64,000 nt of DNA, taken from assembly GCF_001194135.2 (NCBI RefSeq), contig NC_068985.1, positions 30,890,829-30,954,828 of the forward strand, read 5' to 3'. Both the position numbers and the translations under genes were made by a program. This document shows, one piece after another, positions 8,165 to 47,252 of the stretch (position 1 is the stretch's first letter; the number at the start of each line of letters is the position of its first letter). A model generated the notes under the pieces. That model searched no databases. It saw only the letters and a list, made by a program, of their open reading frames with translations, and had not been told where the DNA came from. Origin of the DNA: Octopus bimaculoides (lineage: Eukaryota).

Positions 8165-9694
8165 TCTATCTTATTCATCATAGTCCTCCAGGCAATAATA
8201 GAGGAATTCAAAACAGGATGCCCCTGGGAGCTTCTCTATGCTGATGACTTTGCTCTAATAGCTGAATTACTATCAGAAGTAGAGAAGTTTCAGGTGTGGA
8301 AGCAAGGTCTAGAATCGAAGGGCACGATAGTCAATCTAGCAAAAAACAAAATCTTAATAAGTAGGAAGGCAGATAAATCACAAATTCCTTTAGGTAGATG
8401 GCCCTGCTCAATCTGTAGAAAAGTTGTAGGTAGAAACTCCATAAGATGTGCCTGGTGTAAACTATGGACACATAAGAGGTGCAGCAATATCAAAGGAAGG
8501 CTAAGTAGCAAGATAGTTTTTGTATGAGGGAAATGCTCAGGGGCAATAAACACTGAAAATGTGCAGAAAACAGCTTCTGTCACATTCCAGGGGTAAAAAC
8601 TAGAAACAGTTGATAACTTCTGTTACCTAGGTGACCAAGTCAGTAGCGGTGGGTGGATGCTCTGAGAGTGTAGCTGCTAGAATAAGAATATTCTGGGTAA
8701 AGTTCAGAGAGCTCCTACTTCTGCTGGTGACAAAGGGCCTCTCGCTCAGAGTAAAAGGCAGACTGTATGACACATGTGTACAAACATCCATGCTACATGG
8801 CAGTGAAACATGGGCCGTGACTGCTGAGGACATGCATAACCTTGCAAAGAATGAATCTAGTATGCTCCGCTGGATGTGCAATGTCAGTGTGCATACACGC
8901 CAGAGTGTAAGCACCCTGAGAGAAAAGTTAGGCATAAGAAGCATCGGATGTGGTGTGCAAGAGAGACAATTGTGCTGGTATGGTCATGTGTTGCGTATGG
9001 ATAAGAACAGCTGTGTGAAAAAGTGTCACACCCTAGCAGTAGAGGGAATCTGTGGAAGAGGTAGACCCAGGAAGACCTGGGATGAGGTGGTGAAGCACGA
9101 CCTTCAAATGTTGGGCCTCACCAAGGCAATGACAAGTGACTGAGATCTTTGGAGATATGATATGCTTGAGAAGACCCAGCAAGCCAAGTGAGACCATAAC
9201 CATGGCAGATGCCAGTGCAGCATAACCAGCCCATTTAAGAGTACCCTTCAATCATTGAGCAATAAACTGCACTTGGAAAGACCTGTTGAGGCAAGTGAAG
9301 TTGTTGCCGTGGCCGATGACAGTACCGCCTGATTGTCACCCTTGCTGGTGGCATGTAAAAAGCACCATTCGAGCATGGTCGATGCCAGTGCCAGCTGACT
9401 GGTCCCTTGCAGGTTGCACGTAAGAAGCACCATTCGAGCGTAGTCGTTGCCAGTGCCGCCTGTTCCGCTCCCATGCTGGTGGCACGTAAAAAGCACCATT
9501 CAAGCGTGGTCGATGCCAGTACTGCCTAACTGACCCTTGTGCCAGTGGAACATAGAAAGCACCCACTACACTCTCGGAGTGGTTGGCGTAAGGAAGGGCA
9601 TCCAGCTGTAGAAACTTTGCCAGATCAGATTGGAGCCTTGAGCAGCCTTCTGGCTTGCCAGCCCTCAGTCAAACTGTCCAACCTATGGCAGCAT
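8165..9694 (+). mobile_element. 5'-truncated RTE-clade LINE (RT end, PHD-like finger, C-terminus, repeat-bearing 3' UTR)
   Basis: ORFs 8150..8527 (PWELLYADD) and 8631..9143 (MLHGSETW, RQLCWYGHVLRM, GRGRPRKTW); stops and frameshifts; 3' UTR matches tails at 24.7k and 25.6k. Confidence 0.92.
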
Positions 9695-19700: not shown

Positions 19701-20654
19701 TAAGATAAAATGGTTAAGTTTTATCATTATCATGTCCACAATTATCATTTCTTCCGTCATTATTACTTTTTTAATTATGGTTAATAACTTGCAGGTGAGT
19801 TGTTTATAAGTAAACATTGTGTTGTAAAAAAAAAAAAAAAAAGGAAAACTACGTAACTTACTTTCACCTATTTTTATTCATTTCTTTGTGTAGTCATTTT
19901 ACACTCACTGGTTTAGAAAGAAGGTAATTCTTTCCATTTAGATCATCTTTGCATGACAATGATTAAAAAAAAAAAAACAACAGCATGACTTTCCATCCCT
20001 GCATATGAAGCTATTCCAGTGCTCTATAGATATATTCAGATACAGTTGTAAATCTTGTAAGGTTGTTCTATCTAACCCCTTAACTATGCCAGTCAACATT
20101 TCAATTTGCTGCTAAAATCTCAGTTGATAGCTTACTTGCAAAACATTAGTTTTGAATGCTCTGTCTTCATGCTGCATGAAGATAGAATTTTGCATATGTA
20201 AAATTCTGCATGTGTTTTGTTCAATCCTTTTGTTTTTGTTTTCATTTTTTCCTGGCTAAATTAATATTGCCTGCTAGTTTATTCTGGGATATTGCATCTA
20301 TATGTTTCATTTACTAAGGAGTTTGATTTCACTGATTTAATACCCTTAAGACTAAAATAAAACATTGAAGATCACTTGAAAAAAAAACTTTTTAAATACC
20401 ATTATTAATCTTATTGCTTGTCTGTTTTTGTTGTTTTAAAAACAATTGGGACTCAAACTGAAAATTATTTCCTGTTTGTTATTATATATTGCTTTCAGTA
20501 ATTTTTGTTTACAAATAAAATCCTGCATGATTCTTTCCAATTGAAAACATTTTTCAGAATTGCTTTAACAACATCATACATGACCGTAAATGTTTGTTTA
20601 CATAGGTTTCTGTAAATAATTCTAACTAGACTTTACTGTTATCAACAGAATTAA

Positions 20655-22858: not shown

Positions 22859-24135
22859 TCAGGTCATCCCATAAGTTCTGTCTGATTTTACCTTTTTTTA
22901 AAATTGAATGAAATTTAATAGTATTTTAGAATGTTTAATGGAATTAATTATTTTTATGCATTTGTGTACATTTAAACTAATTAAATATTTTTCTACAGAA
23001 TAATAGAATTAAAATTTCTTTGATTAAAACCCTTTCTAACATGGAAGTATCCAAAGAGCATTTGAGGCACATAATGCTTTATGAGTACAAAAATGGAAAC
23101 TCTGCAGCCGAAGCGACTCAAAACATACACTCACTTTATGGGAAAGAATGCTTGAATGAAAGAACTTGCAGAAGATGGTTTGCAAAATTCAAAAGTGGAG
23201 ATTTCAGCCTTGAAGATGAAGATCAAACAGGACGTCCAGTTGAGTTTGATGATAAGCTCTTGATGCATTACTTGAAGAAAATCCTGCATTATCAGTTGAA
23301 GAATTGGCAACAAATCTTAGTTCAAACCATACCACTGTTCATCATCATCTTCAGCAACTTGGAAAGGTTCCTAAGCTTGGAAAATGGACGCCTCATGAAT
23401 TGTCCGAAAGCAACTGCAAATCCCCAGTTGACCTCTGCTCTTCTCTCCATTCTCGCGAACTCATTTCACCGTTTTTGGATAGACTTGTGACTGGTGACGA
23501 AAAATGGATCTTCTATCAAAATGTTAAACGTCGTAAACAGTGAAAGGGAAAAAGCTCAACCACAACTGAGAAGGGAACTTTATCGGAAAAAGGTTCTTCT
23601 CACTATCTGGTGGGATTGCAAAGGAGTAATTCACTTTGAATTGTTACCACCTAATGCAACAATCAATGCTCAAGTCTACTGTCAGCAATTAGAGCGTTTG
23701 AACCAAGCTTTGAAGAAAAAAAGACCCGCTTTAGTTAATCGTGAAGGAGTGATGTTTCATTAGGACAATGCATGACCCCACATTGCAATGATCACATCAC
23801 AGAAGATCAAAGAGCTTGGTTGGGAAAAAATTCCTCATCCACCTTATTCTCCCAACCTTGCTCCTTCAGACTACCATTTGTTTCGTAGTTTACAGAATCA
23901 TTTGGGAGACATAACTTTCACAAGCCAGGAAGAGGTTGAAACTGACATTTCAGAGTTTGTTGCTTTGAAACCAAAAGAGTTTTACATTGATGAGATTAAA
24001 AAGCTTGTAAAAAGATGGAAGGAAGTCATAGATAATCAGGGAAAGTACATTGATGATTAGATTTCAATTAAATATAACATTTGATCACTTGTTTTCTTTA
24101 TACAAAATTCGTACATGACTTATGGGATGACCTGA
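22859..24135 (+). mobile_element. Full-length mariner (DD34D) transposon, inactive
   Basis: TA TSD on both sides; TIR tcaggtcatcccataag (17 nt perfect, about 30 nt imperfect); 1277 bp. Confidence 0.96.
23041..24060 (+). pseudogene. Mariner transposase pseudogene
   Basis: MEVSKEHLRH...WTPHEL...VTGDEKW...H*DNA*PH...YSPNLAPSDY (D-34-D); frameshifts near 23262 and 23540, stops at 23761 and 23773. Confidence 0.95.
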
Positions 24136-30342: not shown

Positions 30343-30899
30343 GTGTGTGTGTGTGTGTGTTACTGTCTCCCTGCCATGACATCACATGGTAGTTGTAAAT
30401 AAGTGTCACTGTCATCCAAATAGTGTCCTTTGTTTCTGATCTTTCCTTGGTCATAGGGAAATATTGCATTACTTGGAAGCAGGTGTGGTAATATTTCTCC
30501 ATGATCAGTGAAGGCATCTGGCCATAGAAAATCCACCCCAACAAATTCCATTTGACCCATATGAGCATGGTAAAGTGGACATTAAAATGATGGTAATGGT
30601 TGTTGTGTTTCTTATACATAATTTATAGAGACATAGATCTAGCTGAAATATTAAGGCTAGCAGTTTTGAAATATTTATAGAGTTATGCAGTAAGATGTAA
30701 GTAATGTTGTATAATATAGTGTTTTAGACTGTTATACTTCAAGTAAACATTAATTACAGCTTCAGGCTGTAATTCTTTCTAATATTACCAGTCCATGCTG
30801 TAAAGTGGTTGGCATTAGGAAGGACATTCTTGTTGTATAGGATATACATGCACACACACACACAATTATATATACAAGCATTAAATATTTTTATTTCAG

Positions 30900-31072
30900 A
30901 AATTCCTGAATTCCTTTTGTATGCTCAACGCAAAATGATTCATCGATATGAATTTGGTTCCCAGAAAAATGACATCCTTGTACAAAGAGGCATCCTTGAT
31001 GCTGTAGTTTTTGATTTTGACAAAGAAGACAACTGCATCTACTGGGGAGACTTGGCTTTGAACACTATAACG
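30900..31072 (+). CDS. SORL1: SORL1 exon, YWTD propeller (IPEFLLYAQRK...FDFDKEDNCIYWGDLAL)
   Basis: tttcag / gttggt, phase 1-0; 173 nt. Confidence 0.94.
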
Positions 31073-31384
31073 GTTGGTTAAATTGCCTTAATAACATTGT
31101 GTTTCTTCCTCTCAGTATAGCTATGCTTTTTAGTTATCCTCTCTCTTTATTAACTAACTTTCATGTGCTTTTGTTTTGCTCTTATGCTTTCTATTATCCT
31201 TTACAGTCCATTCATTTCCTCACATTCATGGTCTGTTCCAACTGCTTTTACTCTTACTAAGATATTATTTAGTAGTCTCGGTTCTTCTATTTTTTTTCTT
31301 CTTCTTCTCTCATCTCTTTTCTTCACTTGTCTTTATTTTCATATTCACAAAACCCACTAACTTTCAAACATACTCTACTTTCAG

Positions 31385-31611
31385 AGACTCTGTTTAGATG
31401 GAAATCATAGCCTTGAGGTTCTTATTGAAAAAGATGTTTCTGGCATTGAAGGAATGGCTTTTGACTGGAGTTCAGGCAATATCTATTGGATTGATTCTGG
31501 GGCTCGCAAGCTTGAAGTGGTGCATAAAACTGGCCGTTTCAGGAGAACACTTCTTAGAGGAGGTGATACCCTGGATAAACCTCGATCAATTACTCTTAAA
31601 CCACACTACGG
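31385..31611 (+). CDS. SORL1: SORL1 exon, YWTD propeller (RLCLDGN...IEGMAFDWSSGNIYWID...DKPRSI)
   Basis: tttcag / gtacat, phase 0-2; LDL-receptor class B repeats. Confidence 0.95.
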
Positions 31612-32083
31612 GTACATATATTTATTAATTTAACAAAGACGTGTGAATAACTTAGCTGAAATCAATAATTAGTAGATTTCAGATATCTCAAAGATCAATG
31701 TGGACACAGATCAGATACCTGTATGAAAGAGACCTAATGAAAACAATTTGTTTGAATAGTGTCTTCCATTTAGTAAAAGTATATATTTGGGGAAATTGCA
31801 TATTATTTCATTTGGCTACTGTATTATGTGACATAAGAATAAATGAATCAAGGCTCTCCCTTTAGATTGGCTCATGTAGCTTCAGGACAAAAAAAAAAAT
31901 GAAAAAAGCAATTTAATCATGTTGGTAGTTTGATTTTTTGGTTACATTATTAATGAGAGTGAGTGATGAGATTGACAGAGTTCTGAACTAATAGAACATG
32001 TAAATTGCATGTAAGGTTTGAACCCTGAAAATAAATCTTTGTTGATCTAACAAATGAATTATTATATTTGATTTTTCTAACAG

Positions 32084-32348
32084 CTACCTCTATTGGACAG
32101 ACTGGTCATCAACTAACCCACGTATAGTCAAAGCCAGTATGGACTGCCGTAACATCACCTATATAGTTCAGGGCAAAGATAATTTGGTATGGCCCAATGG
32201 CATTACTATTGATCACCAGATGGGACGATTGTACTGGACAGATGCCTTTCTGGATCAAATTGTCTCTTCAGATTTAGATGGCAATGACCGAAAGATCATA
32301 GTAAAAGGCAATGAAATCCCACACCCTTATGCTATTGTGGTATATAAG
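32084..32348 (+). CDS. SORL1: SORL1 exon, YWTD propeller (YLYWTDW...WPNGITID...LYWTDAF...PHPYAIVVYK)
   Basis: taacag / gtatgt, phase 2-0; ORF 32139..32393. Confidence 0.96.
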
Positions 32349-32467
32349 GTATGTAACCATAGTGTTGTCATTTCTATTCCTTTTGTTTTTTAACTGCCTG
32401 TTCAATCAAGCACACAAATAGAGTAACTCACAACATCATGGTTGAATTCATAAATCTATATTAATTC

Positions 32468-32514
32468 ACTAGTAGAGATACCTGGCGTTGCTCGGGGTTA
32501 AAATGGTATAGTTT
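32468..32514 (-). mobile_element. Solo Helitron 3' terminus
   Basis: 40/47 identical to the reverse complement of the Helitron end at 46491-46537, including CTAG. Confidence 0.7.
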
Positions 32515-33146
32515 TTTTTATTGTTTTACTTGTTTCAGTCATGTGACCATGGCCATGCTGCAGCAGCGCCTTTAGTCAAACAAATCGATCCCAGGATTTA
32601 TTCTTTGTAAGCCTAGTACTTATTCTATCGGTGTCTTTTGCTGAACCACTAAGTTATGGAAATGTAAACACTGCAACATTGGTTGTCAAGCGATGGTGGG
32701 GGTACAAACACAGACACACATACAAATATACACATATATATGACAGTCTTCTTTCAGTTTCCATGTATGAAAACCACTCACAAGGGTTTGGTCAGCCTNN
32801 NNNNNNNNNNNNNNNNNNNNNNNNNNNNNNNNNNNNNNNNNNNNNNNNNNNNNNNNNNNNNNNNNNNNNNNNNNNNNNNNNNNNNNNNNNNNNNNNNNNN
32901 NNNNNNNNNNNNNNNNNNNNNNNNNNNNNNNNNNNNNNNNNNNNNNNNNNNNNNNNNNNNNNNNNNNNNNNNNNNNNNNNNNNNNNNNNNNNNNNNNNNN
33001 NNNNNNNNNNNNNNNNNNNNNNNNNNNNNNNNNNNNNNNNNNNNNNNNNNNNNNNNNNNNNNNNNNNNNNNNNNNNNNNNNNNNNNNNNNNNNNNNNNNN
33101 NNNNNNNNNNNNNNNNNNNNNNNNNNNNNNNNNNNNNNNNNNNNNN

Positions 33147-33196
<50 letters not shown>

Positions 33197-33198
<2 letters not shown>

Positions 33199-33350
33199 TT
33201 GTTGTTGGCACTCCATCGATTACGATGTTGAGGGTTCCAGTTGATCCAATCAACGGAACAGCCTGCTCGTGAAATTAATGTGCAAGTGGCTGAGCACTCC
33301 ACAGACACGTATACCCTTAACGTAGTTCTCGGAGATATTCAGCGTAACAC
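33197..33350 (-). mobile_element. SINE 3' portion
   Basis: gttggcactccatcg...ggttccagttgatcc...gtggctgagcactccacagacacg; recognised from memory as a coleoid SINE tail. Confidence 0.55.
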
Positions 33351-33405
33351 CAAGAAAATAACATTCAAATTCTTTGTTCATTATCATTTAATTAATTGTT
33401 TTTAG

Positions 33406-33544
33406 GAAAATATTTACTGGACTGATCTCAGCAGACAAGCATTATTGACTGCTAACAAAAATACTGGTTATGGTGTGACTGCAATGCTAACCAATGTGAC
33501 TGGTATAACTGATTTGAAGGTTGTCCATCAATTGGCCCAAAGCA
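33406..33544 (+). CDS. SORL1: SORL1 exon, YWTD propeller end (ENIYWTDLSRQ...DLKVVHQLAQS)
   Basis: ttttag / gtaagt, phase 0-1; 139 nt. Confidence 0.94.
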
Positions 33545-33779
33545 GTAAGTATTGTTTTCTATTTTTCTCTAACATTTCTATTTCAAGTAGTGTTTTTGTT
33601 TTTTTTTAATTGGTCTTCAGTGATTTTAATTTATTGTAATGTAAAAGTATCAATTTTGTTGATGCTATATATAAGATATATTTAACAATAGAAGCCCTCT
33701 TTACGTTTCTTGACTAAGATGGTTATATATATAGACATAGTCACATTATTTGCTGCCCATTTTACTTCCAGCTCAACAC

Positions 33780-34690: not shown

Positions 34691-35027
34691 TTAATTTCTT
34701 GGACTAAAGTTTCCTGTGAGATTTGTGCATTTTTGTGGCTTCTCCTACCCACATTCTGTCAACTTCAGTGACTGCCTCTCCCACTTCCCCAAAGGTTTGC
34801 TTACTGTATGTCTTTTCTTTACATTAATGACCCATTTACTATCACCTCTAATTTCACTCACGACTATGTGGTGGTGAAAATTAATTTGGGAGGTTTTGTA
34901 GAAGCAACATTGAATGAAGAACTTGAAACACATTTTGCATTATGAAACAGAGGAAATTAAAACTTAACCCTGCAAAATATGTTTTTTTAACTAATATCAT
35001 GTATATTTTTTATTATTACTTTTACAG

Positions 35028-35228
35028 CTTTAAGTGCTTGTTCTTTCAAGAATGGGATGTGTTCACAGCTCTGTGTACCTCGACCTCATCATTTGCATAT
35101 TGGACACAACAACCGAACTTGTCTCTGTCAAAACTACATTGGACATATTCTAAAGCCTTCTGGAGATGAAGACTGTTACTGTCCTCATGGGGAAACTTAC
35201 CAAAATGGAATTTGCAAACCAAACAACA
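35028..35228 (+). CDS. SORL1: SORL1 exon, 8-cysteine EGF-like domain
   Basis: ttacag / gtaaat, phase 1-1; CSFKNGMCSQLC...CLC...PSGDEDCYC...GIC. Confidence 0.94.
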
Positions 35229-35800: not shown

Positions 35801-35911
35801 ATACTTGTGAACCTCATCAGTTTCAGTGTCACAACAGCCAATGTGTCTCAGCTGCTGTGAAATGTGACCATGATCCTGATTGTGTTGATGGCAGTGATGA
35901 ACTTAACTGTG
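35801..35911 (+). CDS. SORL1: SORL1 exon, LDL-A/CR repeat 1
   Basis: tgtcag / gttagt, phase 1-1; [35 protein letters not shown]. Confidence 0.95.
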
Positions 35912-36750: not shown

Positions 36751-38319
36751 AGACTAAACCAATTAAAAGCAAAAAAAAAAGGTTACCATACTTAGGATTA
36801 ATATTTTATTGGCTTCAGGACTCATGAAAAAATAAGCAATTTAATACTGGAATCTTGGAAGATATCCATGTAACTTCCTCTGTTAGTTCACCACCAACCT
36901 TGCCAAGTTTTCTGAACCAGAACTCACACACCATTCAATCATTCCTAGCTTTCTTTTGTCCTGCAAACTATAGAATCTTCAGGAAAGCAATATATTATTT
37001 CTCTGATATTACACATTATCTTCTTCTTTAGCATGAGACCAGTTTTATAAGTGATGTGGATGTAATCAAACGATTCAACCTCTAGTACTATACCATTACT
37101 TATTTTACATCCTGAAACTTTAAATTAAGAATTCCAAACCTAAAAGTTGTAATGCATTTAGTCTAGCACATTCCTCTCAGACATCTACATTGCCAATTCT
37201 TGTAAACATGTTAGTATGATTTAATTGCTGGGTGTTCACTTAATAGCTAAGTTTTTGTTTCTTTCACATATCATAATATGGTGTTATTAAAATACTCTAA
37301 ATACATTAAAGTTTTTGTTTGAAGTTAAGGTTGTGATGTATCTAAGATATAGTTTCAATTTGACTAATAGTTGACAATTTTGTTTTCAACTGTATTACAT
37401 TTATCTCAAAATAAGTTAAAATCTGTCCTGGATTTGCAAAAGAAAATATTTTAGTGAATGTTGTCAAAATATTAAGATGGTAATTATCATACATTAAATG
37501 AAATAACATAACGTCTTGGTGCACCTTATTACTATTACACATTAATTTTTTTTTTTTTGTCATACAATGAAAATATTTACTACTTCTATCTCACAGTTTC
37601 TGTGATTAAGATTAAATAAGGTTTCCAACTATAAAAGTTCTTATTCTAATAATTTGTGTATTCAGTTTGCAAGAAGAACACTACTGCTTATTGAGAATAC
37701 TCAAAAAAAGAATTTAAAAAAAAGAAACTGTAAAGAAACTGAATAAGTCAGCTTTGTTGTAGCTCTAATCATAGTTATTACTGTTACAAAAGATAGATCC
37801 AGTTAGTCTTTTAAATGACACTAGCACAAAAAAAAGAGAGATTTCAACTGGAGATGATATTAGGTGATGATAGTTTTTATTATTGATCTCTTCTAAGCAA
37901 TCAAAGAAGAGGGGAATAGGTTATAATCATTTACTTTGTAATCATATATGGAACAGAAAGCTTGAAGATAATATCTAATTAAAATGGATATGTTCCATAA
38001 TGTAAGTAAAATTATATTTCTTTGTTTCTTAGACTTTTCTTTTAATTTCATAGTGAACATTCATTTCCCTTATACAAACAAACCTTTCCTTTTTCTTTTC
38101 TGTTTTGTACTTTGTTTTTTTTTTTTTTCCCCCTCCTGTTTCTGATCAGCATATTTAGATTGCATGAACTGCAAAGCTCCTCAGAAATAATTAATCGCAC
38201 TTGACTGCAACTGAATGGTTTGTTATCACCCAGTGTAGCTATCACATTCTCATTTCACTGAGATTTTACATCATACCAGCTCCTATCAGCTGCTCTATGT
38301 TAGTTTTGTTTCCCTGCAG

Positions 38320-38436
38320 AATATCATCCATGTTCTGAAGGTAACTTCCGTTGTCCTAACATGCAATGCATTCCACACCACTGGCTCTGTAACCATGAAA
38401 ATGACTGCAGTGATGGCTCTGATGAGAAAAATTGCA
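38320..38436 (+). CDS. SORL1: SORL1 exon, CR repeat 2
   Basis: ctgcag / gtgagt, phase 1-1; [35 protein letters not shown]. Confidence 0.94.
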
Positions 38437-38705
38437 GTGAGTATTTCTGTCTCATCTTCCTTAAATATTCCTGCGATTTTATTTTTTATTTTATTTTTTT
38501 GATATTTAAATATTTTTGTTACTATTTTATTTGTTTGTTGTTATTTTTTCTGAATTGATTAGCATAAAAAAATAGAAACACATACAGTATACATTATTAA
38601 CAACTTTTATTTTTGCATTAACATTCTATTGTGGCATGGGAATAATAACAAGGACAAAAATGTTGGATAAATTTGTATTAGAAGAATTTTGGAAATTAAC
38701 TTGAA

Positions 38706-39032
38706 ATAATAATAATAATAATAATAATAATCCTTTCTACTGTAGAGGCAGAAGGCCTGAACTTTTGGGGGTTGAAGCTAGTCAAATACATCAACCCCAG
38801 TGCTCAACTAGCACTATTTTATTGACTGCTAAGGGATGAAAAGTAAAGTTGAATGATTTAGTCACATAGCCAGCAGTTTTGAAGGAAAGAAAGCAGTTGA
38901 TTATATCAAACCCAGTATTTGTTTGGTAGTTTATTTTCTCAACTGGAATTCAAACTCAGGATTTATATGACTAAAACTAAATACTGCAAAAACATGGGTC
39001 TAACACTAACGATTCTGCCAGTCCCTGCCCGT

Positions 39033-39073
<41 letters not shown>

Positions 39074-39210
39074 GGGTTTTAAGTTTTGCCACAAGGGCAG
39101 CCATTTTGGGGGAGATGATGAGTTGATTACATCAACCCAGTATTTCACTGGTACTTAATTTATCGACCCCGAAAGGATGAAAGGCAAAGTCAACCTCGGT
39201 GGAATTTGAA
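38706..39210 (-). mobile_element. Cluster of three same-orientation partial SINE copies with (AAT)n tails
   Basis: Repeated ttgattacatcaacccag...gaaaggatgaaaggcaaagtc motif; (AAT)n at 38706-38727 and 39034-39072. Confidence 0.65.
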
Positions 39211-39639
39211 CTATAATAATGATAATAATTATAATAATAATTTTTTAAATAATGATAGCAGTAATAATGAAAGTTATGCATAGTTATGTAGGAATAGAAA
39301 TGCTTCTTATTTGAAGCAAAATCATCTACTGCTAGCGGGAGTGTTCTTCCATTTGGAACATATAAAAGTTAATATTTTCTCAATCCTTCAATATTTAGTT
39401 GTTAACCAAAGATTATAAGCTAGATAGGTGTTTGAAATCACACTGTCTGATAAATTACTTGACAGCCAAATAATAACAATTAGTTAAAGATATGGTTAGT
39501 ATTGACATGATTCTTAATACATTTTTTTTCTATTATAATCATAACTAGTAGAAATTAGATGTCTAAATATTTGAGATAAATTGCTAAGATTATAATTTTT
39601 TTTAGGTTATTAACCCACTTATTATTAAGTATCTGGTTC

Positions 39640-39672
<33 letters not shown>

Positions 39673-39679
39673 CATACAT

Positions 39680-40040
39680 ATATCATCATCATCATCGTTT
39701 AACATCTGTTTTCAATGCTAGCATGGGTTGGACAGTTCGACTGGGGTCTGGGAAGCCAGGAGGCTGCACCAGGCTCCAGTCTGATCTGGCAGTGTTTCTA
39801 CAGCTGGATGCCCTTCCTAACGCCAACCACTCCATGAGTGTAGTGGGTGCTTTTTACATGCCACTGGCACGGAAGCCAGTCAAGGCAGCACTGGCATGTT
39901 CGGATGGTGCTTTTTACATGCCACCGGCATGGGGATCACAACTACAATTTCCGTTTGATTTTCATTTTGATGTCGATGTACTTGACTCAATAGGTCTCCT
40001 CAAACACAGCATGTCACCCTATGATCCAAGGTACTTTTGA
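39680..40040 (-). mobile_element. RTE LINE 3' tail
   Basis: (CAT)n then gtttaacatctgttttc...ctggatgcccttcctaacgccaaccac. Confidence 0.82.
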
Positions 40041-40399
40041 ATGAGCTGGGGCTGTAATACCAGACTTGATTAAAACTAAGAATCTATGGTAGTTATGTTG
40101 TGGATAAGAATGTTATTACCTTTAGTGTAGAATTAAAGGTTTCTAGTTTGAATCTAATTTGATACTATATATGTAAATATAGAGTATGAAGATCAGAGAT
40201 CAATCTGATTGAAGCAGAGTGTAGATGTCAATATTTAAATTGTCTTATATATCTAATGATGGAATTAATAGTCCAAAAAATTATAACTGTTCTTTTGGTA
40301 TTTCACTCTTTAGCTGCAAAATTAAATTTCATGGTTATTCCAGTAATGGTGTTAAATATCTACCAAGAAATAGAATTGGTATTTTTTGCAAGTCATGCT

Positions 40400-40766
40400 C
40401 CCCAGTGCCATTTGACTGGCACCTGTGCTGGTGGCACATAAAAAGTACTGTTCGAGTGTTGGGCCTCATGAAGGCAGTGACAGGTGACCAAGATCTTTGG
40501 CAATATACCGTGCTTGTGTAGACCTGTCAAACCAAGTGAGACTGTAGTTGTGGTCATTGCCAGTGTCAGGTCAATGGCACCCATGCCAGTGGCATGTAAG
40601 AAAAACACCTGCTACACTCTTGGAGTGGTTGGCATTAGGAAGGGCATCCAACAGTAGAAACCTTGCCAAATCAGATCAGAACCTGGTACAGCTCCCCGGC
40701 TTACCAGTCAAACTGTCCAACCCATGCCAGCATGGAAAATGGATGTTAAAAGATGATGATGATGAT
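40400..40766 (+). mobile_element. RTE LINE C-terminus and 3' tail
   Basis: LGLMKAVTGDQDLWQYTVL then 3' UTR and (GAT)n. Confidence 0.8.
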
Positions 40767-42164
40767 GTTGCCTCAATGAACTTGATACATCTCAACAAAA
40801 TATAGTTTTAAATACAATGTCATTCCTCAGCAGAAGATAGATTGGTATATAAAACTGCTTTCCACTGTTAAGGGTAATGAAATTTTGAGTGGATATATCT
40901 GATTTCCACACTAAAAGGATGAAGTTAACCTCATTAAAAATATTGATTGGATTCATTTTTGATTTTTCAAATGAAGCTCTAAAACATTTGATTTTGCAGG
41001 TCAGATTAAAGCATAAACTAGATCTTGAGCATCAGATAGGGACAATTATTCATAAATTCCCTATTGATAATTAAACCAAAATAAATGGCTAAAGTGGTCA
41101 ATATAATCATAACAACTTTATTAACAATAAAGAAACAACTATGAGATGTAAGCAATGTTGTTTGCAGTGATGTATTGGAAAAGCTCATTCATATGGTATA
41201 CATACAATCCTATTAAATAAGAATCTATAGTGTGAGAGCAGAGATAGAAATTGCTTAAATGAATGCAGGCAGTTTTTTTGAGAAGACCAGTGCTTGGTAG
41301 AAAGCTTGCACTATTTCATTTTCAAGCCCTTTCAACACCATTCGTGTATCAGTTGAATCTATTCAAATGAACTCATACCTAAATTTGAAAAAGCAACTTT
41401 CACTTCCAATGTATAGACAAAGTGAAGGAAAAATAGGTCATATCTATTAATATTAAGAGTTATACACTTCTTTTTCAGTGGTTGAGAAAACAAAAGATTC
41501 TCTAAGGTGCACTAATTTGACTCAACTCTCATTTGGATTCCAACACTGAATGTATGCTAACAATATATATTTTATGGAATATTGTAAAAGTTAAAAAGTA
41601 ATTTAATACTTTACTAGAAAATTGAACTTGGAGGTGAGGTTAGACTAAACATTGTCATGAGCCAGATCCAGTTCACTGCTCATTTGTTTGACACACCTGC
41701 TTTCAAACATTTCAAGTGATTTCTTTCAAATTTTTGATTTAAAACATTAGTTATATTTGTTATCCCCTATTTTCTGCTTTTCTCACCTATAGATATCAAG
41801 CTTTATTTCATCATGTAATAAAGCTAGTAAAGAAAATCTTTCTTTTCAATTAAGGTAATAAATGAATTTAGTAAGATGAATTATTGTGATCTATCTGAAA
41901 TGAAACTCTACACTTAGTGAAGACATAATTGAATCAATTTGCCTAGATACTGATAATGTATATTATTGTCAGTTAAGAGCTGTTTTCACTTTTCTTTTCT
42001 GATATCTTAGCTAATTCATGATTACATGTACCAATTTATGTAATGTTAACTTCCTTCTGGTCTGTTAATTTTCTAGATATTTTTTTCTTCTTTTTATTGA
42101 AATATTGACGTTAAAAATAACTTATCTCTAATAATGTTGGTCTATTTTCCCTTCCATTTTCCAG

Positions 42165-42287
42165 CCTATCCACCTTGTTCTTCTGCTGAATTCACTTGCA
42201 ATAATGGCCGCTGCATTCCTTTGAATTGGACGTGTGACTTTGACGATGACTGCCATGATTATTCTGATGAAGCTAATTGTGAAGATG
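42165..42287 (+). CDS. SORL1: SORL1 exon, CR repeat 3
   Basis: ttccag / gtaagt, phase 1-1; [35 protein letters not shown]. Confidence 0.95.
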
Positions 42288-42412
42288 GTAAGTTGTTTTG
42301 GAATAACTTTTTTCCTGACTTTATCTGATTGCTAAATTACTTATGAAGTAAGATTTCTATGGGTTTTTTTTAAATCCAAACAGAATAATCTAGTACTGTA
42401 GACCAGATATTA

Positions 42413-42630
42413 TTGGCTACAAATTTTAGCACAAGGACTGCAAGTTTGGGGAAGTGGGTAAGTTGATTACATCAACCCTGTTTCTCAACTGGTGCTTATT
42501 TTTATCGACACTGAAAGAACAAAAATTAAAGTCGACCTTGACAGAATTTGAACTCAGAACATAAAGGTAGATGAAATGCCTCTAAGCATTTTGCTCAGCA
42601 TGCTGACAATTCCACTAGCTCACCACCTTA
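42413..42630 (-). mobile_element. tRNA-derived SINE copy
   Basis: Full-length match to the 5173/10871 family. Confidence 0.75.
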
Positions 42631-43637
42631 TAGACCAGGTATTATTGTACATGACTTGGAAAAAAGAGAATGCTTCATAATAGACACTGCAATTCTTTCA
42701 GAAAAAAACATTGCAAACAAAGAACTTCTAATACAAAATCTACAATACTAAAAGAACTGGTAATACATACATTACAAGTGTTCTATAAAGAGAACATAAA
42801 ATTGCTGCATAATTCAACGTGAATGTGAAATGACATTAAACATCATATAAGGTAAATGAACGTTTCTGCAGGAATGCCAAGTCATATTCACTTAGTGAGG
42901 ATGAATTTTGATGTCATTAGCGTTAGATGCAGTAAGAGCTGGTAGCAGCAATGAATTTCTTTGTCCTAATGCAGAGAAAGAAAGCAATAGCTTCCTGGAG
43001 GCAAATGCAAGCTAAACTTCTTAAATGGAGAAAAACTGACCTATTTAAGGAAATTGCTGGGCACCATTGCAATAGGTAAAAACTCCAAGCAGTGTAAAAT
43101 ATGGCTTGGACCATGATTACCAGCATGAACATCAAACTTCAAAAAGTAGTTAACCATTTAATGGTTTTAGTAAATTTATACAGAAAAAGTAAGCATTATA
43201 CCATAAAAGTCAACTTCATTATATTTTTTCTGTAAAATCTTATTCTGACATTAAATGAGTCAACTTCCTATACATCATTTTTCAAGAAAAAAAATTTCTA
43301 AAAAATTCTGAAAACAATATAAAGTTTATTTTTGTTTTTGCGGAAAAAGTGTGTAAATTACATGGATTTTTATGGTAGTCTAAAAGTCTCTACTCTTAAA
43401 TCATCCTAATACAAACTTGATAGAAAAGTAATGCACACTACTTTACATATTTATAACCCATCTAATTGCTTTTAACGTGATATAAATATGTCAATATTTG
43501 ATGCATGCAGGTCTCTATTTCTGCCTGTCTTTTCTAATGACATTTTTTAAATGCATAAGACTATAAATTTCATCAAAGCCATATTCTTTTTACCAAATTA
43601 TTAGCAGTTGCTTTATGTTTGTTTTATTTCTCTACAG

Positions 43638-43754
43638 AATTTAACCAGTGTTCTGAAGGTAATTTCCATTGCCCTAACATGCAGTGTATTCCAAGACATT
43701 GGATCTGTGATCATGAAAATGACTGTAGTGATGGTTCTGATGAGAAAAATTGCA
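43638..43754 (+). CDS. SORL1: SORL1 exon, CR repeat 4 (paralogue of CR2)
   Basis: ctacag / gtgagt, phase 1-1; [35 protein letters not shown]. Confidence 0.94.
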
Positions 43755-44378
43755 GTGAGTATTTCTGTCTCATCTTCCTCAAATATTCATAACAGATTCC
43801 TTTTCTTCAAAATGTTTTTCATGTTTTTTTTGTTTACTTTTTATCTTTTACTTGAGTCAATCATTGGACTGTGAATCTGCTGGGGCACCACCCTGAAGGG
43901 TCTGCTCAAACAAATCAACTCCAGGACTGAGTTTTAAGTCTGGTACTTATTCTATAAGTCTCTTTTGCCTAACTACTGTGGTATGAGGAGATAAACAAAC
44001 CAACATCAGTCGTCAAGTGATAGTGGTNNNNNNNNNNNNNNNNNNNNNNNNNNNNNNNNNNNNNNNNNNNNNNCATGCACACGTAAGGTGTCATGTGGTG
44101 GAGCTGATCCCAAAACCACATGGCTGCAAAGCAAGCTTCTAAACCACACAGCCATTACGAATGTTTATTTTTTTTTAATGATTTGTGAAAAATAAATTGT
44201 ATCTCACTACCACACAGGTATATGAGTATGTATGCATACACACAGTATTATAATTATACAGTTTGCTTTAAAAGTGAATATTGTGTTGCTATTTTCTCAT
44301 TATGATATCAGACCAAGAATATAATAATACTTTTCACTATCTAAAGTTTCATGCACTATTTTCATTTCCTTCTTCTAG

Positions 44379-44501
44379 CTTACCCATCATGTTCTCCTAA
44401 TGAATTCACATGTAAGAATGGTCGTTGTATTCTTTTGAATTGGACATGCGATTTTGATGACGATTGCCGTGATTATTCTGATGAAGTTAACTGTACAGAC
44501 G
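44379..44501 (+). CDS. SORL1: SORL1 exon, CR repeat 5 (paralogue of CR3)
   Basis: ttctag / gtaagc, phase 1-1; [35 protein letters not shown]. Confidence 0.94.
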
Positions 44502-44782: not shown

Positions 44783-46536
44783 TTTGTATATAAAATTCTT
44801 TGTCTCTCTCTCTGTCTGTCTGTTCTCTATGCATTCTCAAATGGCTCAACCAAATCAAATCAAATTTTACAAGGTAATAGTATCAGACCCTGTGAGTGTC
44901 AACATGTAATTGTTCTTTTCATTTGGATTAAAGCAATATAACATTGGCATGATTTGGTATTATGTGTGAAAAGTGAAAGAATAACATCTATATTGTAATG
45001 TGAGATAATAGTTTCACTTTTAATTCTAATGTGAAAACACTAAGATCATCTTATTTCTATTATATTTGAAATAAATGAATAATTTACATCCTAATGTGAG
45101 CAACATTACACGTCAGCAAACTTTCCATTTTTACAGCCACCACAGTGGAATGATGTATCAGAGAGTCTGAAGAGAGAGGGGAGATGAGATTTTCTCAAGA
45201 TCAGCAAATGCATACTGCAGCACATCAGATGGTGTTTCAATGCAAAAGGAAGATGAGTCTTTCCCAAGATCAGCAAAGGCATGCTGCAGCATGTCAAATG
45301 GAGTCTCAAGACAGAAGCGAGATGAGACTTTCTCAATATCAAGAAAGGCATGCTGTAGTACATCAGATGCAATCTCAATACAGAAGGGAGATGAGACTTT
45401 TTTTGTAGATCAGCAAATGCATGCTGCAGCACATCAAATGGAGTCACAAGACAGAAGCANNNNNNNNNNAAGCGAGATGAGACTTTTTCAATATCAAGAA
45501 AGGCATGCTGCAGTACATCAGATGCAATCTCAATACAGAAGGGAGATGAGACTTTCCCAAGATCAGCAAATGCATGCTGCAGCACATCAAATGGAGTCAC
45601 AAGACAGAAGCAAGATGAGACTTTCTTAAGAGTCTCCAGAGATGAAACTTTCTCAAGAGAGAAGGGGGATGAAACTTTCCCAAAATCAGCAAATGCATGC
45701 TGCAGCACTTAATGCTGGATCATTAAAACAACTTTTTAATGATTAGACAGCGGTCCAGTAGAATAGCTTCAGAAACAGACTACATACAAATTCATTCTTC
45801 ACAACTCCTGGAGCTGCTTTCAGATATGATCCATTCCGTTCTTATAAAAATGATAATTTTGCCCAAATTGGTGTGCTAAACTCAAATTGTCGTTTCTGCA
45901 AAGCTTTAAAATTTACAAATGAAACTAATAGCATGTGCTGCTCAGGTGGTAAGGTAAGATTGCCAGCACTACTAGCTCCTCCTCAACCTCTTATGGATCT
46001 TCTGGAAGGCACTTCCATCCAGTCAAAGGATTTTCTGAACAATATCAGACAATACAACCTTGCATTTCAAATGATATCATTTGGTGCATCTAAGAAGATA
46101 CTTGAACATTTAAGATCAAGGGCAAGTCTATCGCCTCATTGGTTCCCTGTTACCCACAAATGAACAAGCACAGTTCCTCTAAATTATCTTTATGAGTGAT
46201 GTAGGGCAACAAACACGAAGAAGGGGTCAAAACTTCAGACGATTGGTCGTGTTAGATGCAGCGCCGACTGCCGCAAAGGAGAGTATATTCACTGACAGCT
46301 TTTCGGTGTGTTCAAAAATCACATAACCCCCACCCCCAATTTTCCATGACAGGTTAGGACCTGCATACTCCAAATGGATGCATTGCATGTTGCTTAGTTG
46401 AATTAGCTCATCAATTACTTCACAAATGTTTTGTCGTCAATGCTGCACTTTCTCATATCACCTGTTTTAACATAACTGTGATATATATACAAGCTATGCT
46501 ATTTTAATCCCAAGCAACGCCAGATATCTCTGCTAG
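44783..46536 (+). mobile_element. Non-autonomous Helitron with RepHel N-terminal remnant
   Basis: ORF 45873..46163 CRFCKALKF.NE...CCSGGKVRLP...PPQPL...FLNNIRQYN.AFQM.SFGA is the typical Helitron Rep N-terminal Zn region; 3' end gcaacgcc...ctgCTAG|t; 5' boundary approximate. Confidence 0.82.
45181..45710 (+). repeat. 69-bp minisatellite (about 7 units, 23-aa EMRLSQDQQMHAAAHQMESQDRS) inside the Helitron
   Basis: Units start at 45181, 45250, 45319, 45388, about 45473, 45542, 45611; 10-N gap inside. Confidence 0.92.
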
Positions 46537-47093: not shown

Positions 47094-47252
47094 TTTACAA
47101 AACTACAGCACCTGTTCCAACTACAACTAAGTCAAGTTCCTTGCCCAGATGTAATGGTGTAGAATTCCAGTGTGACAATGGCTTTTGTATTTTTGCCAGT
47201 GAACGTTGTGATGGCATCAATGACTGTGATGATAACTCAGATGAAGAAAACT
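47094..47252 (+). CDS. SORL1: SORL1 exon, Thr/Pro linker + CR repeat 6
   Basis: atatag / gtaagt, phase 1-1; [32 protein letters not shown]...[15 protein letters not shown](C). Confidence 0.92.

What the first reader, a model, noticed from the sequence alone, without database searches (positions are those of the whole stretch)
38320..44501. Tandem duplication of a two-exon ligand-binding module inside SORL1 (CR2-CR3 to CR4-CR5)
Exon 38320-38436 vs 43638-43754: both 117 nt, 98/117 nt and 32/39 aa identical. Exon 42165-42287 vs 44379-44501: both 123 nt, 97/123 nt and 33/41 aa identical. The A-B-A'-B' order, intact splice sites, all cysteines kept and many synonymous differences argue for a real, selected, lineage-specific duplication raising the CR count from 8 to 10 (human has 11). 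All four exons are phase 1-1, so any can be skipped or swapped in frame, giving a potential combinatorial ligand-binding cassette in a neuronal sorting receptor.
Basis: partly seen in the sequence, partly recalled or inferred. Interest (0 to 1): 0.75.

Follow-up and report, generated by a model that had tools for sequence, protein, structure and literature searches.

The report
Octopod SorLA swapped two ligand-binding modules
In the octopus sorting-receptor gene SORL1, a two-exon pair of ligand-binding modules (CR2-CR3) was copied in an early octopod ancestor and now sits where modules CR4-CR5 are in cuttlefish, so the module count stays at ten; it is a real, expressed and conserved piece of gene evolution of an ordinary kind.

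Summary
Exons A (38320-38436) and A' (43638-43754) share 98/117 nt. Exons B (42165-42287) and B' (44379-44501) share 97/123 nt. Other CR-module pairs in this gene average 57% (maximum 70%).

All four exons lie at single-copy depth in independent DNA data sets. They are spliced in the order CR1-A-B-A'-B'-CR6 in raw RNA reads and in transcript contigs from six runs (four of organism A, two of a sister species). The assembly gap lies in the A'-B' intron and is spliced out.

The gene is Octopus bimaculoides SORL1, and the public protein model already contains all four exons.

- Ten CR modules is the usual count in the invertebrates sampled, from coral to amphioxus and cuttlefish.
- Cuttlefish keeps distinct CR4 and CR5. 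Octopus and Argonauta have copies of CR2-CR3 there instead. This is a replacement on the octopod stem, not a rise from 8 to 10.
- dN/dS is about 0.07, so both copies are under purifying selection.
- A 53-nt block that is nearly identical at the A/A' exon-intron boundary is absent in Argonauta. This points to later gene conversion in the Octopus lineage.

Inclusion of all four exons is the dominant form and I saw no skipping. Sister-species annotations list pair-skipping isoforms, which I could not verify. Interest is modest.

The parts
35801..35911 (+). Exon encoding CR1 of the SORL1 CR cluster; splices to exon A
   Evidence: AG..GT, phase 1-1. Joint 35911->38320 in 17 RNA reads and one transcript contig.
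38320..38436 (+). Exon A = CR2, the parent-type copy. Asn replaces the first Ca2+-cage Asp (CNHEND), as in Argonauta
   Evidence: Reads running past its 3' end all continue into exon B (15 reads, agreement 1). 71% aa identical to cuttlefish CR2.
42165..42287 (+). Exon B = CR3, the parent-type copy
   Evidence: Joint 42287->43638 in 27 reads. 77% aa identical to cuttlefish CR3 and 73% over the tblastn hit to oyster CR3.
43638..43754 (+). Exon A' = a second CR2-type module, sitting in the CR4 slot
   Evidence: 98/117 nt identical to A. Best match in cuttlefish is CR2 (71%), not CR4 (49%). Present with 0 mismatches in four transcript contigs.
44379..44501 (+). Exon B' = a second CR3-type module, sitting in the CR5 slot
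   Evidence: 97/123 nt identical to B. Best match in cuttlefish is CR3 (74%), not CR5 (57%). Joint 43754->44379 in 32 reads; continues to 47094.
47094..47252 (+). Exon encoding the Thr/Pro-rich linker plus CR6. It marks the end of the five-module N-terminal block
   Evidence: The linker position is the same in the other invertebrate SORL1 proteins.
38284..38319 (+). Upstream intron flank of A, homologous to 43602-43637 (29/36 nt)
   Evidence: The Argonauta paralogues share only 18/36.
38418..38470 (+). 53-nt block (last 19 nt of exon A plus the first 34 nt of the intron) identical, bar one base, to 43736-43788. Inferred gene-conversion tract
   Evidence: The intron part is 33/34 between Octopus A and A', but 14-16/34 in every comparison involving Argonauta.
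43736..43788 (+). Partner of the 53-nt block at exon A'; probably the recipient copy
   Evidence: Both Octopus copies carry the A-type GTGAGTAT donor and the TCT/AAT codons, whereas Argonauta A' has GTAAGTGT and TCG/AAC.
44028..44073 (.). Assembly gap (N run) inside the A'-B' intron. It does not affect the coding sequence
   Evidence: The joint 43754->44379 spans it in RNA. DNA contigs stop in a repeat on both sides.

Best explanation
The window holds part of Octopus bimaculoides SORL1 (SorLA). On the octopod stem, a genomic segment carrying the two exons for modules CR2 and CR3 was duplicated in tandem. This happened after the split from the cuttlefish lineage and before the Octopus-Argonauta split. 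The ancestral exons for CR4 and CR5 were lost. The CR cluster therefore still has ten modules, but reads CR1-CR2-CR3-CR2'-CR3'-linker-CR6...CR10. Shown here: both copies are transcribed and spliced together in the dominant mRNA. Both keep all six cysteines, the Trp and the DxSDE calcium-cage residues, and both evolve under strong purifying selection. Inferred: each copy is a working ligand-binding module, so the octopod receptor offers the CR2-CR3 type of binding surface twice and has given up whatever CR4-CR5 bound. Also inferred: the two copies have since exchanged sequence by gene conversion in the Octopus lineage, which makes them look younger there than in Argonauta.
For: Gene identity: the CR cluster of XP_014768390.1 (P0238) is identical to the window translation, and Pfam finds Vps10, Sortilin_C, Ldl_recept_b, Ldl_recept_a and fn3. 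Real DNA: single-copy depth in three studies, and all four exons present in three related species. Expression and order: junction reads CR1->A 17, A->B 15, B->A' 27, A'->B' 32 and B'->CR6 26 or more. Four independent transcript contigs of organism A and two of a sister species carry A-B-A'-B'. Phylogeny: Argonauta hians has the same four exons with the same sizes and phases. The cuttlefish-type protein (its cluster includes Acanthosepion pharaonis) has distinct CR4 and CR5, like bivalves, gastropods, brachiopod, annelids, amphioxus and coral, nearly all with 10 CRs. Identity matrix: A' matches cuttlefish CR2 at 71% vs CR4 at 49%; B' matches CR3 at 74% vs CR5 at 57%. NJ tree: octopod (2+3) and (4+5) units form a clade at 97% bootstrap, sister to cuttlefish (2+3) at 80%; Oct23+Arg23 91%, Oct45+Arg45 57%. 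The nucleotide four-point test favours orthology (sums 0.311 vs 0.448 and 0.470). Selection: dN 0.09, dS about 1.4-1.5, dN/dS about 0.07. Loss: no relic of CR4/CR5 in the introns of either octopod. Conversion: Octopus paralogue distance is 0.18 against 0.27 in Argonauta, and the 53-nt block is 33/34 in the Octopus introns but about 15/34 against or within Argonauta.
Against: The order of events (duplication then deletion, or a single replacement event) cannot be recovered, because the introns share no similarity beyond about 36 nt. Only three cephalopod lineages were available (Octopus spp., Argonauta, a sepiid). No squid, Vampyroteuthis, cirrate octopod or Nautilus was found, so the node is bracketed only coarsely. 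The Oct45+Arg45 grouping has just 57% bootstrap, and modules of 35-41 aa carry little signal. Function of the modules is inferred from conserved residues only. Exon A has Asn at the first calcium-cage Asp position.
Confidence: 0.85

Rival explanations
1. One reading: a duplication that added two modules (8 to 10) and created an in-frame cassette whose exons are skipped or swapped combinatorially.
For: All four exons are phase 1-1 and any adjacent pair is 240 nt. Annotated isoforms exist in sister species: O. sinensis X3 (P0374) lacks A'+B', and O. vulgaris P0373/P0372 join A directly to B'.
Against: Ten CRs is the ancestral count, and the cuttlefish type has ten with distinct CR4/CR5. In O. 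bimaculoides, no skip joint reached 3 reads in three raw RNA runs, while 15-32 reads supported each inclusive junction. Transcript contigs from six runs in two species are fully inclusive. The A->B' junction of the O. vulgaris models could be a mapping ambiguity, because the last 19 nt of A and A' are identical.
Confidence: 0.1
2. No duplication or deletion took place. The resident CR4 and CR5 exons were overwritten in place by non-allelic gene conversion from CR2 and CR3.
For: Module count and position are exactly preserved. Conversion between these exons does occur in the Octopus lineage. No relic of CR4/CR5 is left.
Against: Conversion needs prior homology, yet cuttlefish CR2 vs CR4 and CR3 vs CR5 are only about 49-57% identical in protein. 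Module lengths are the other way round (cuttlefish CR4 41 aa and CR5 39 aa, against A' 39 and B' 41). The homology covers the splice flanks of both exons as well.
Confidence: 0.12
3. Assembly artefact: the two pairs are alleles or haplotigs, or a mis-joined scaffold around the N gap.
For: An N gap lies between A' and B', and short-read contigs do not bridge the repeats in the introns.
Against: Each exon is at the same depth as the unique flanks in three DNA studies. RNA junctions link all four exons in order. The same arrangement is present in an independent Argonauta genome assembly without N.
Confidence: 0.01
4. Octopus and Argonauta duplicated CR2-CR3 independently.
For: Octopus B is closer in protein to Argonauta B' (89%) than to Argonauta B (80%), and Oct45+Arg45 has only 57% bootstrap.
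Against: The four-point nucleotide test supports orthology. Shared derived residues also do: A has N21 and H16 in both genera; A' has H7 and an EFN linker in both; B' has lost P15 and H27 in both. Exon sizes are the same and both genera lost CR4/CR5.
Confidence: 0.03

Closest known systems
SORL1 / SorLA (LR11) CR cluster of other animals
   Same: Same gene and architecture: Vps10, 10CC, YWTD/EGF, CR cluster, FN3 cassette, and a tail ending PMITGFSDDEPLVIA. There are ten CR modules with a Thr/Pro-rich linker after the fifth.
   Different: In octopods, slots 4 and 5 hold paralogues of modules 2 and 3 instead of the CR4/CR5 types kept from coral to cuttlefish. Vertebrates have 11 modules.
Exon duplication and shuffling of phase 1-1 LDL-receptor class A modules (LDLR, LRP, VLDLR family; established knowledge)
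   Same: One module per symmetric phase 1-1 exon; tandem duplication of exon units; retention of the cysteine and calcium-cage residues.
   Different: Here a two-exon unit was copied and two neighbouring modules disappeared, so the repeat number did not change.
Concerted evolution by non-allelic gene conversion between tandem paralogues (for example globin genes; established knowledge)
   Same: A short tract of near identity (52/53 nt) crosses an exon-intron border, is bounded by diverged sequence, and is lineage-specific.
   Different: It occurs between exons of a single gene, not between genes. Only one short tract is clear, plus a general excess of similarity in Octopus over Argonauta.
Alternative splicing of LA-repeat exons in ApoER2/LRP8 and VLDLR, and mutually exclusive tandem exons (Dscam type); recalled from memory as a lead only
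   Same: In-frame module exons that could be skipped, and duplicated exons of equal length and phase.
   Different: Both members of each pair are included together in the dominant mRNA, so it is not mutually exclusive splicing. Skipping is seen only in unverified annotations of sister species.

Membership tests
SORL1 / SorLA | N-terminal Vps10 beta-propeller followed by the 10CC module | tested here: met
   Pfam Sortilin-Vps10 (1.4e-97) and Sortilin_C (4.8e-37) on P0238, whose sequence matches the window exons.
SORL1 / SorLA | YWTD (LDL-receptor class B) propeller and an EGF-like module before the CR cluster | tested here: met
   Ldl_recept_b hits. Window exons at 30893-33546 and 35027-35227 align to SORL1 fragments.
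SORL1 / SorLA | Cluster of about 10-11 complement-type (LDLa) repeats followed by an FN3 cassette, a transmembrane helix and a conserved acidic tail | tested here: met
   Ten LDLa modules, fn3 hits, and a tail ...SPMITGFSDDEPLVIA shared with Argonauta, the cuttlefish type and a bivalve-like sequence. The resemblance to the human tail is recalled from memory.
LDL-receptor class A (complement-type) module | Six cysteines, a conserved Trp/aromatic residue and a C-terminal acidic D-x-S-D-E calcium cage, in each of A, B, A' and B' | tested here: met
   Four Ldl_recept_a stretches, 3e-53; sequences. Exon A has Asn at the first cage Asp (CNHEND), as does Argonauta A.
Tandem segmental (two-exon) duplication | Copies in A-B-A'-B' order, with equal exon sizes and phases, and homology reaching into the splice flanks | tested here: met
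   the same in Argonauta.
Tandem segmental (two-exon) duplication | Homology through the intron between the copied exons | tested here: not met
   No similarity between intron A-B and intron A'-B' beyond the flanks. This is expected if the event is old (dS about 1.4) and does not separate duplication from conversion.
Mutually exclusive tandem exons | Only one member of each duplicated pair is present in any one mRNA | tested here: not met
   Junctions B->A' (27 reads) and A'->B' (32 reads), and contigs carrying all four exons.
Cassette (skipped) exons | Junction reads that join the flanking exons directly | tested here: inconclusive
   No such joint with 3 or more reads, and the A->B loose-end agreement is 1.0. 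But depth was only 15-32 reads per junction. The loose-end rows that would have shown what joins to the B' and CR6 acceptors in the raw reads were not printed. Sister-species annotations list pair-skipping isoforms.
Gene-conversion tract | A sharply bounded block of near identity between paralogues that is absent from the orthologous paralogues of an outgroup | tested here: met
   52/53 nt in Octopus. The intron part is 33/34 in Octopus against 14/34 between Argonauta A and A', and 14-16/34 across genera.

The most novel reading that the evidence does not exclude
The octopod receptor may be made in two or more forms. One is a ten-module form with the CR2-CR3 surface doubled. The others are eight-module forms lacking one exon pair, as annotated in O. 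sinensis (A'+B' skipped) and O. vulgaris (B+A' skipped). These could be regulated by tissue or cell type. The duplicated pair would then act as an optional avidity unit in a neuronal sorting receptor, and the strict conservation of ten modules across animals would be relaxed only in octopods.
Probability: 0.15. Interest if true: 0.5.

Novelty: new member of a known kind. Interest (0 to 1): 0.35.

Why it matters
SorLA is a well-studied sorting receptor (APP trafficking, Alzheimer risk), and its CR cluster is its main ligand-binding region. Nearly all the invertebrates sampled here, from coral to amphioxus, have ten modules in the same order. This suggests that both the number and the identity of the modules are constrained. 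Octopods are a natural experiment: two modules were exchanged for copies of their neighbours while the number stayed the same. That points to a spacing or number constraint that is separable from module identity. It could be tested by comparing ligand binding of octopod CR2'-CR3' with cuttlefish CR4-CR5. It is also a clean example of exon-level concerted evolution inside a single gene. It does not change any major view, and the exons are already in the public gene models.

Tried and rejected
1. Two protein searches with short queries (432 aa and 602 aa) returned only LDLR-family proteins and no cephalopod. Listed hits were no longer than about 1.75 times the query, so full-length SORL1 could not appear. 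A 1515-aa query assembled from the window exons solved this.
2. The PDB sequence search found no SORL1 entry, so no human CR sequences were taken from it.
3. Laying reads on long stretches was swamped by highly repeated elements in intron A-B. Short exon-centred stretches and loose-end consensus were used instead.
4. A piece of the X28 transcript contig was shown on exon A with '0 other letters'. That briefly suggested an allele in which A' had been converted to A. One search showed it is the A' part cross-laid (14 mismatches the other way round) and that A' itself is present with 0 mismatches. Rejected.
5. I searched for relics of ancestral CR4/CR5 in the introns between CR1 and CR6 of Octopus and Argonauta. 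None were found.
6. I considered whether the 34-nt identical intron start is a conserved splicing element or a docking/selector sequence. Rejected, because it is not conserved in Argonauta and the exons are not mutually exclusive.
7. I tried to bound minor isoforms from loose ends at the B' and CR6 acceptors.
8. Literature searches found nothing on cephalopod SORL1.
9. I did not use the representative-protein search, the structure prediction or the RNA-family tools, as none of them bears on the question.


Full report
**Observation.**
- A (38320-38436) and A' (43638-43754) are both 117 nt and share 98 positions.
- B (42165-42287) and B' (44379-44501) are both 123 nt and share 97 positions.
- Each exon is bordered by AG and GT, has a length divisible by three and is in phase 1-1.
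- Joined with their neighbours, the exons read through in one frame as LDL-receptor class A (complement-type, CR) modules with six cysteines each. Pfam finds four Ldl_recept_a stretches in the 160-residue translation.
- The similarity is far above background. In the Cys1-Cys6 cores, A/A' are 87% and B/B' 82% identical in nucleotides. The 34 other pairs of CR modules in the window average 57.1% (s.d. 4.7, maximum 70.5).
- Homology reaches only a little into the introns: 36 nt before and 34 nt after A, and 23 nt before and 5 nt after B.

**Assembly gap and reality of the DNA.** The N run at 44028-44073 lies inside the intron between A' and B'.
- Thirty-two RNA reads from three runs join 43754 to 44379 across it, with GT..AG ends. 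The two sides therefore belong to one transcript and are in frame.
- The gap sits in a repeat that short-read contigs do not bridge, so only the intron length is uncertain.
- Contigs from three separate DNA studies of the same species cover each of the four exons with no mismatch. Their depth equals that of the unique flanks (for example 57.1, 57.5, 56.9 and 55.7 in X1). This excludes haplotigs and collapsed or expanded repeats.
- Three related species, about 5% diverged, also carry all four exons at single-copy depth.

**The gene.**
- Upstream window exons encode Vps10, 10CC, YWTD and EGF parts; downstream exons encode FN3 modules.
- A 1515-residue query assembled from these exons retrieved full-length sortilin-related receptors.
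- The best hit is Octopus bimaculoides XP_014768390.1, whose CR cluster is identical to the window translation.
- Pfam on that protein gives Sortilin-Vps10, Sortilin_C, Ldl_recept_b, Ldl_recept_a and fn3.
- So the window is O. bimaculoides SORL1, and the public model already contains A, B, A' and B'.

**Expression and splicing.** In three raw RNA-seq runs, the junction counts were:

| Junction | Reads |
|---|---|
| CR1->A | 17 |
| A->B | 15 (loose-end consensus equals the start of B, agreement 1.0) |
| B->A' | 27 |
| A'->B' | 32 |
| B'->CR6 | at least 26 |

- No exon-skipping joint reached the three-read threshold.
- De novo transcript contigs from four runs of at least three studies carry A, then 122 letters (B), then A' with no mismatch, then the start of B'.
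- Contigs from a sister species do the same.
- The fully inclusive mRNA is therefore the dominant form.
- However, annotated isoforms of sister species omit exon pairs. O. sinensis isoform X3 goes from B straight to CR6. Two O. vulgaris models go from A straight to B'.
- I could not verify these. The A->B' junction could be a mapping ambiguity, because the last 19 nt of A and A' are identical.
- With 15-32 reads per junction, skipping below roughly 5-10% cannot be excluded.

**Evolutionary origin.** I segmented the CR clusters of 25 SORL1 proteins with a profile.
- Nearly all the invertebrates have ten modules in the same layout (coral, amphioxus, starfish, annelids, nemertean, brachiopod, bivalves, gastropods, cephalopods); Penaeus and Tachypleus show nine.
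- The layout is five modules, a Thr/Pro-rich linker, then five more. Vertebrates have eleven.
- A cephalopod sequence 65% identical to Octopus has CR1, an A-like CR2 and a B-like CR3, followed by two different modules, CR4 and CR5, like the other invertebrates. Its 90% cluster includes the cuttlefish Acanthosepion pharaonis.
- Octopus and Argonauta hians instead have A' and B' in slots 4 and 5.
- A' matches cuttlefish CR2 at 71% and CR4 at 49%. B' matches CR3 at 74% and CR5 at 57%.
- In a neighbour-joining tree of two-module units, the octopod (2+3) and (4+5) units form one clade (97% bootstrap). That clade is sister to cuttlefish (2+3) (80%). Cuttlefish (4+5) groups with the CR4-5 units of other phyla.
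- The event therefore did not raise the count from eight to ten. It replaced ancestral CR4-CR5 by a copy of CR2-CR3, leaving ten.
- No relic of CR4/CR5 is detectable in the introns between CR1 and CR6 of either octopod.

**Timing.**
- The Argonauta genome locus (L001) has the four exons with identical sizes (117, 123, 117, 123) and phases.
- Octopus and Argonauta share derived residues within each copy. A has Asn at the first calcium-cage position and His16. A' has His7 and the EFN linker. B' has lost Pro15 and His27.
- The nucleotide four-point test favours orthology of the copies (0.311 against 0.448 and 0.470).
- So there was one event, after the split from the cuttlefish lineage and before the Octopus-Argonauta split.
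- Synonymous sites between the copies are near saturation (pS 0.63-0.65, dS about 1.4-1.5), with dN about 0.09 and dN/dS about 0.07. This means an old event with strong purifying selection on both copies.
- From memory, this bracket is of the order of 100-270 million years. I did not test dates.

**Later gene conversion.**
- In Octopus the paralogues are closer (nucleotide distance 0.18) than in Argonauta (0.27), and closer than the A'B' orthologues are between the two genera (0.19).
- A 53-nt block is identical between A and A' except for one base. It covers the last 19 nt of the exon and the first 34 nt of the intron.
- The intron part is 33/34 between the two Octopus copies. It is only 14/34 between the two Argonauta copies and 14-16/34 across genera.
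- A conserved splicing element would be shared with Argonauta, and it is not. The block is best read as a conversion tract in the Octopus lineage.
- The direction was probably A to A'. Both Octopus copies carry the A-type donor (GTGAGTAT) and A-type synonymous states, where Argonauta A' differs.

**How it most likely works.**
- Shown: two extra CR2/CR3-type modules are encoded, spliced into the main mRNA, and conserved for a long time with all structural residues.
- Inferred from what is established for LDL-receptor class A modules: each module offers a calcium-stabilised acidic pocket for basic residues of ligands, and tandem modules bind cooperatively.
- The octopod receptor would therefore present the CR2-CR3 binding surface twice and lack the CR4-CR5 surfaces. 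The preserved number of ten suggests a constraint on the length or spacing of the cluster.
- The mechanism of replacement is not resolved. Tandem duplication followed by deletion is my preferred reading. In-place conversion is less likely because of low prior homology and swapped module lengths.

**Verdict.** This is a real octopod-specific module replacement with later concerted evolution. It is an instance of well-known processes (phase 1-1 exon duplication, gene conversion) in a well-known receptor, and the exons are already in public gene models. I found no paper describing it. Interest is modest.

Noticed in passing
window 38418-38470 and 43736-43788: A 53-nt block crossing the exon-intron border of A and A' differs by one base, while the rest of the exons differ by about 16%. 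It is not conserved in Argonauta, so it looks like a gene-conversion tract specific to the Octopus lineage.
   Followed up: yes
window 19894-19923 (+): A 30-nt stretch encodes SFYTHWFRKK. These are the ten residues that distinguish annotated SORL1 isoform X1 (2206 aa) from X2 (2196 aa) within the Vps10 domain, so it is probably an alternative micro-exon. The cuttlefish-type sequence has a similar insert (SFYNQWFLKK); the Argonauta model lacks it.
   Followed up: partly
proteins P0374, P0373, P0372 (sister species); junctions would be window 42287->47094 and 38436->44379: Annotated isoforms of O. sinensis (lacking A'+B') and O. vulgaris (lacking B+A') are exactly 80 residues shorter. No supporting junction was seen in O. 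bimaculoides reads at the depth available.
   Followed up: partly
window 38331-38435 (exon A), residue N in CNHEND: The first calcium-cage Asp of the LDLa consensus is Asn in exon A of both Octopus and Argonauta. A' and cuttlefish CR2 keep Asp. This is a fixed change in the parent-slot copy after the duplication.
   Followed up: partly
window 38681-40950 and 42313-42766 (introns A-B and B-A'): Interspersed repeats with enormous copy number: word depth up to millions in DNA contigs and hundreds of RNA reads. Copies at about 39067-39212 and 42407-42554 are 74-76% alike. They swamp read-laying and break short-read contigs.
   Followed up: no
window 45163-45625 (intron B'-CR6): A tandem array with a 69-bp period (about 6-7 copies, 76-82% matches), interrupted by the 10-nt N gap at 45460-45469.
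   Followed up: no
window about 8219-8879 (+) and 23158-23537 (+): Open reading frames inside SORL1 introns that look transposon-derived, judged by eye from the translations. One is a reverse-transcriptase-like fragment (…YADDFALIAE…). The other is a mariner-type transposase fragment (…CRRWFAKFKSGDFSLEDE…, …DEKWIFYQNVKRRK…).
   Followed up: no
locus L001 66577-68715 (Argonauta hians): The same four exons lie within 2.1 kb in Argonauta (introns 361, 666 and 632 nt), against 6.2 kb in Octopus (3728, 1350 and 624 nt). The Octopus introns were expanded mainly by repeats.
   Followed up: partly
window 43718-43753: A 13.5-kb transcript contig from another locus matches 36 nt of exon A' with 5 mismatches in four RNA runs. 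It is presumably another LDLa-repeat gene sharing the DGSDE-coding stretch.
   Followed up: no
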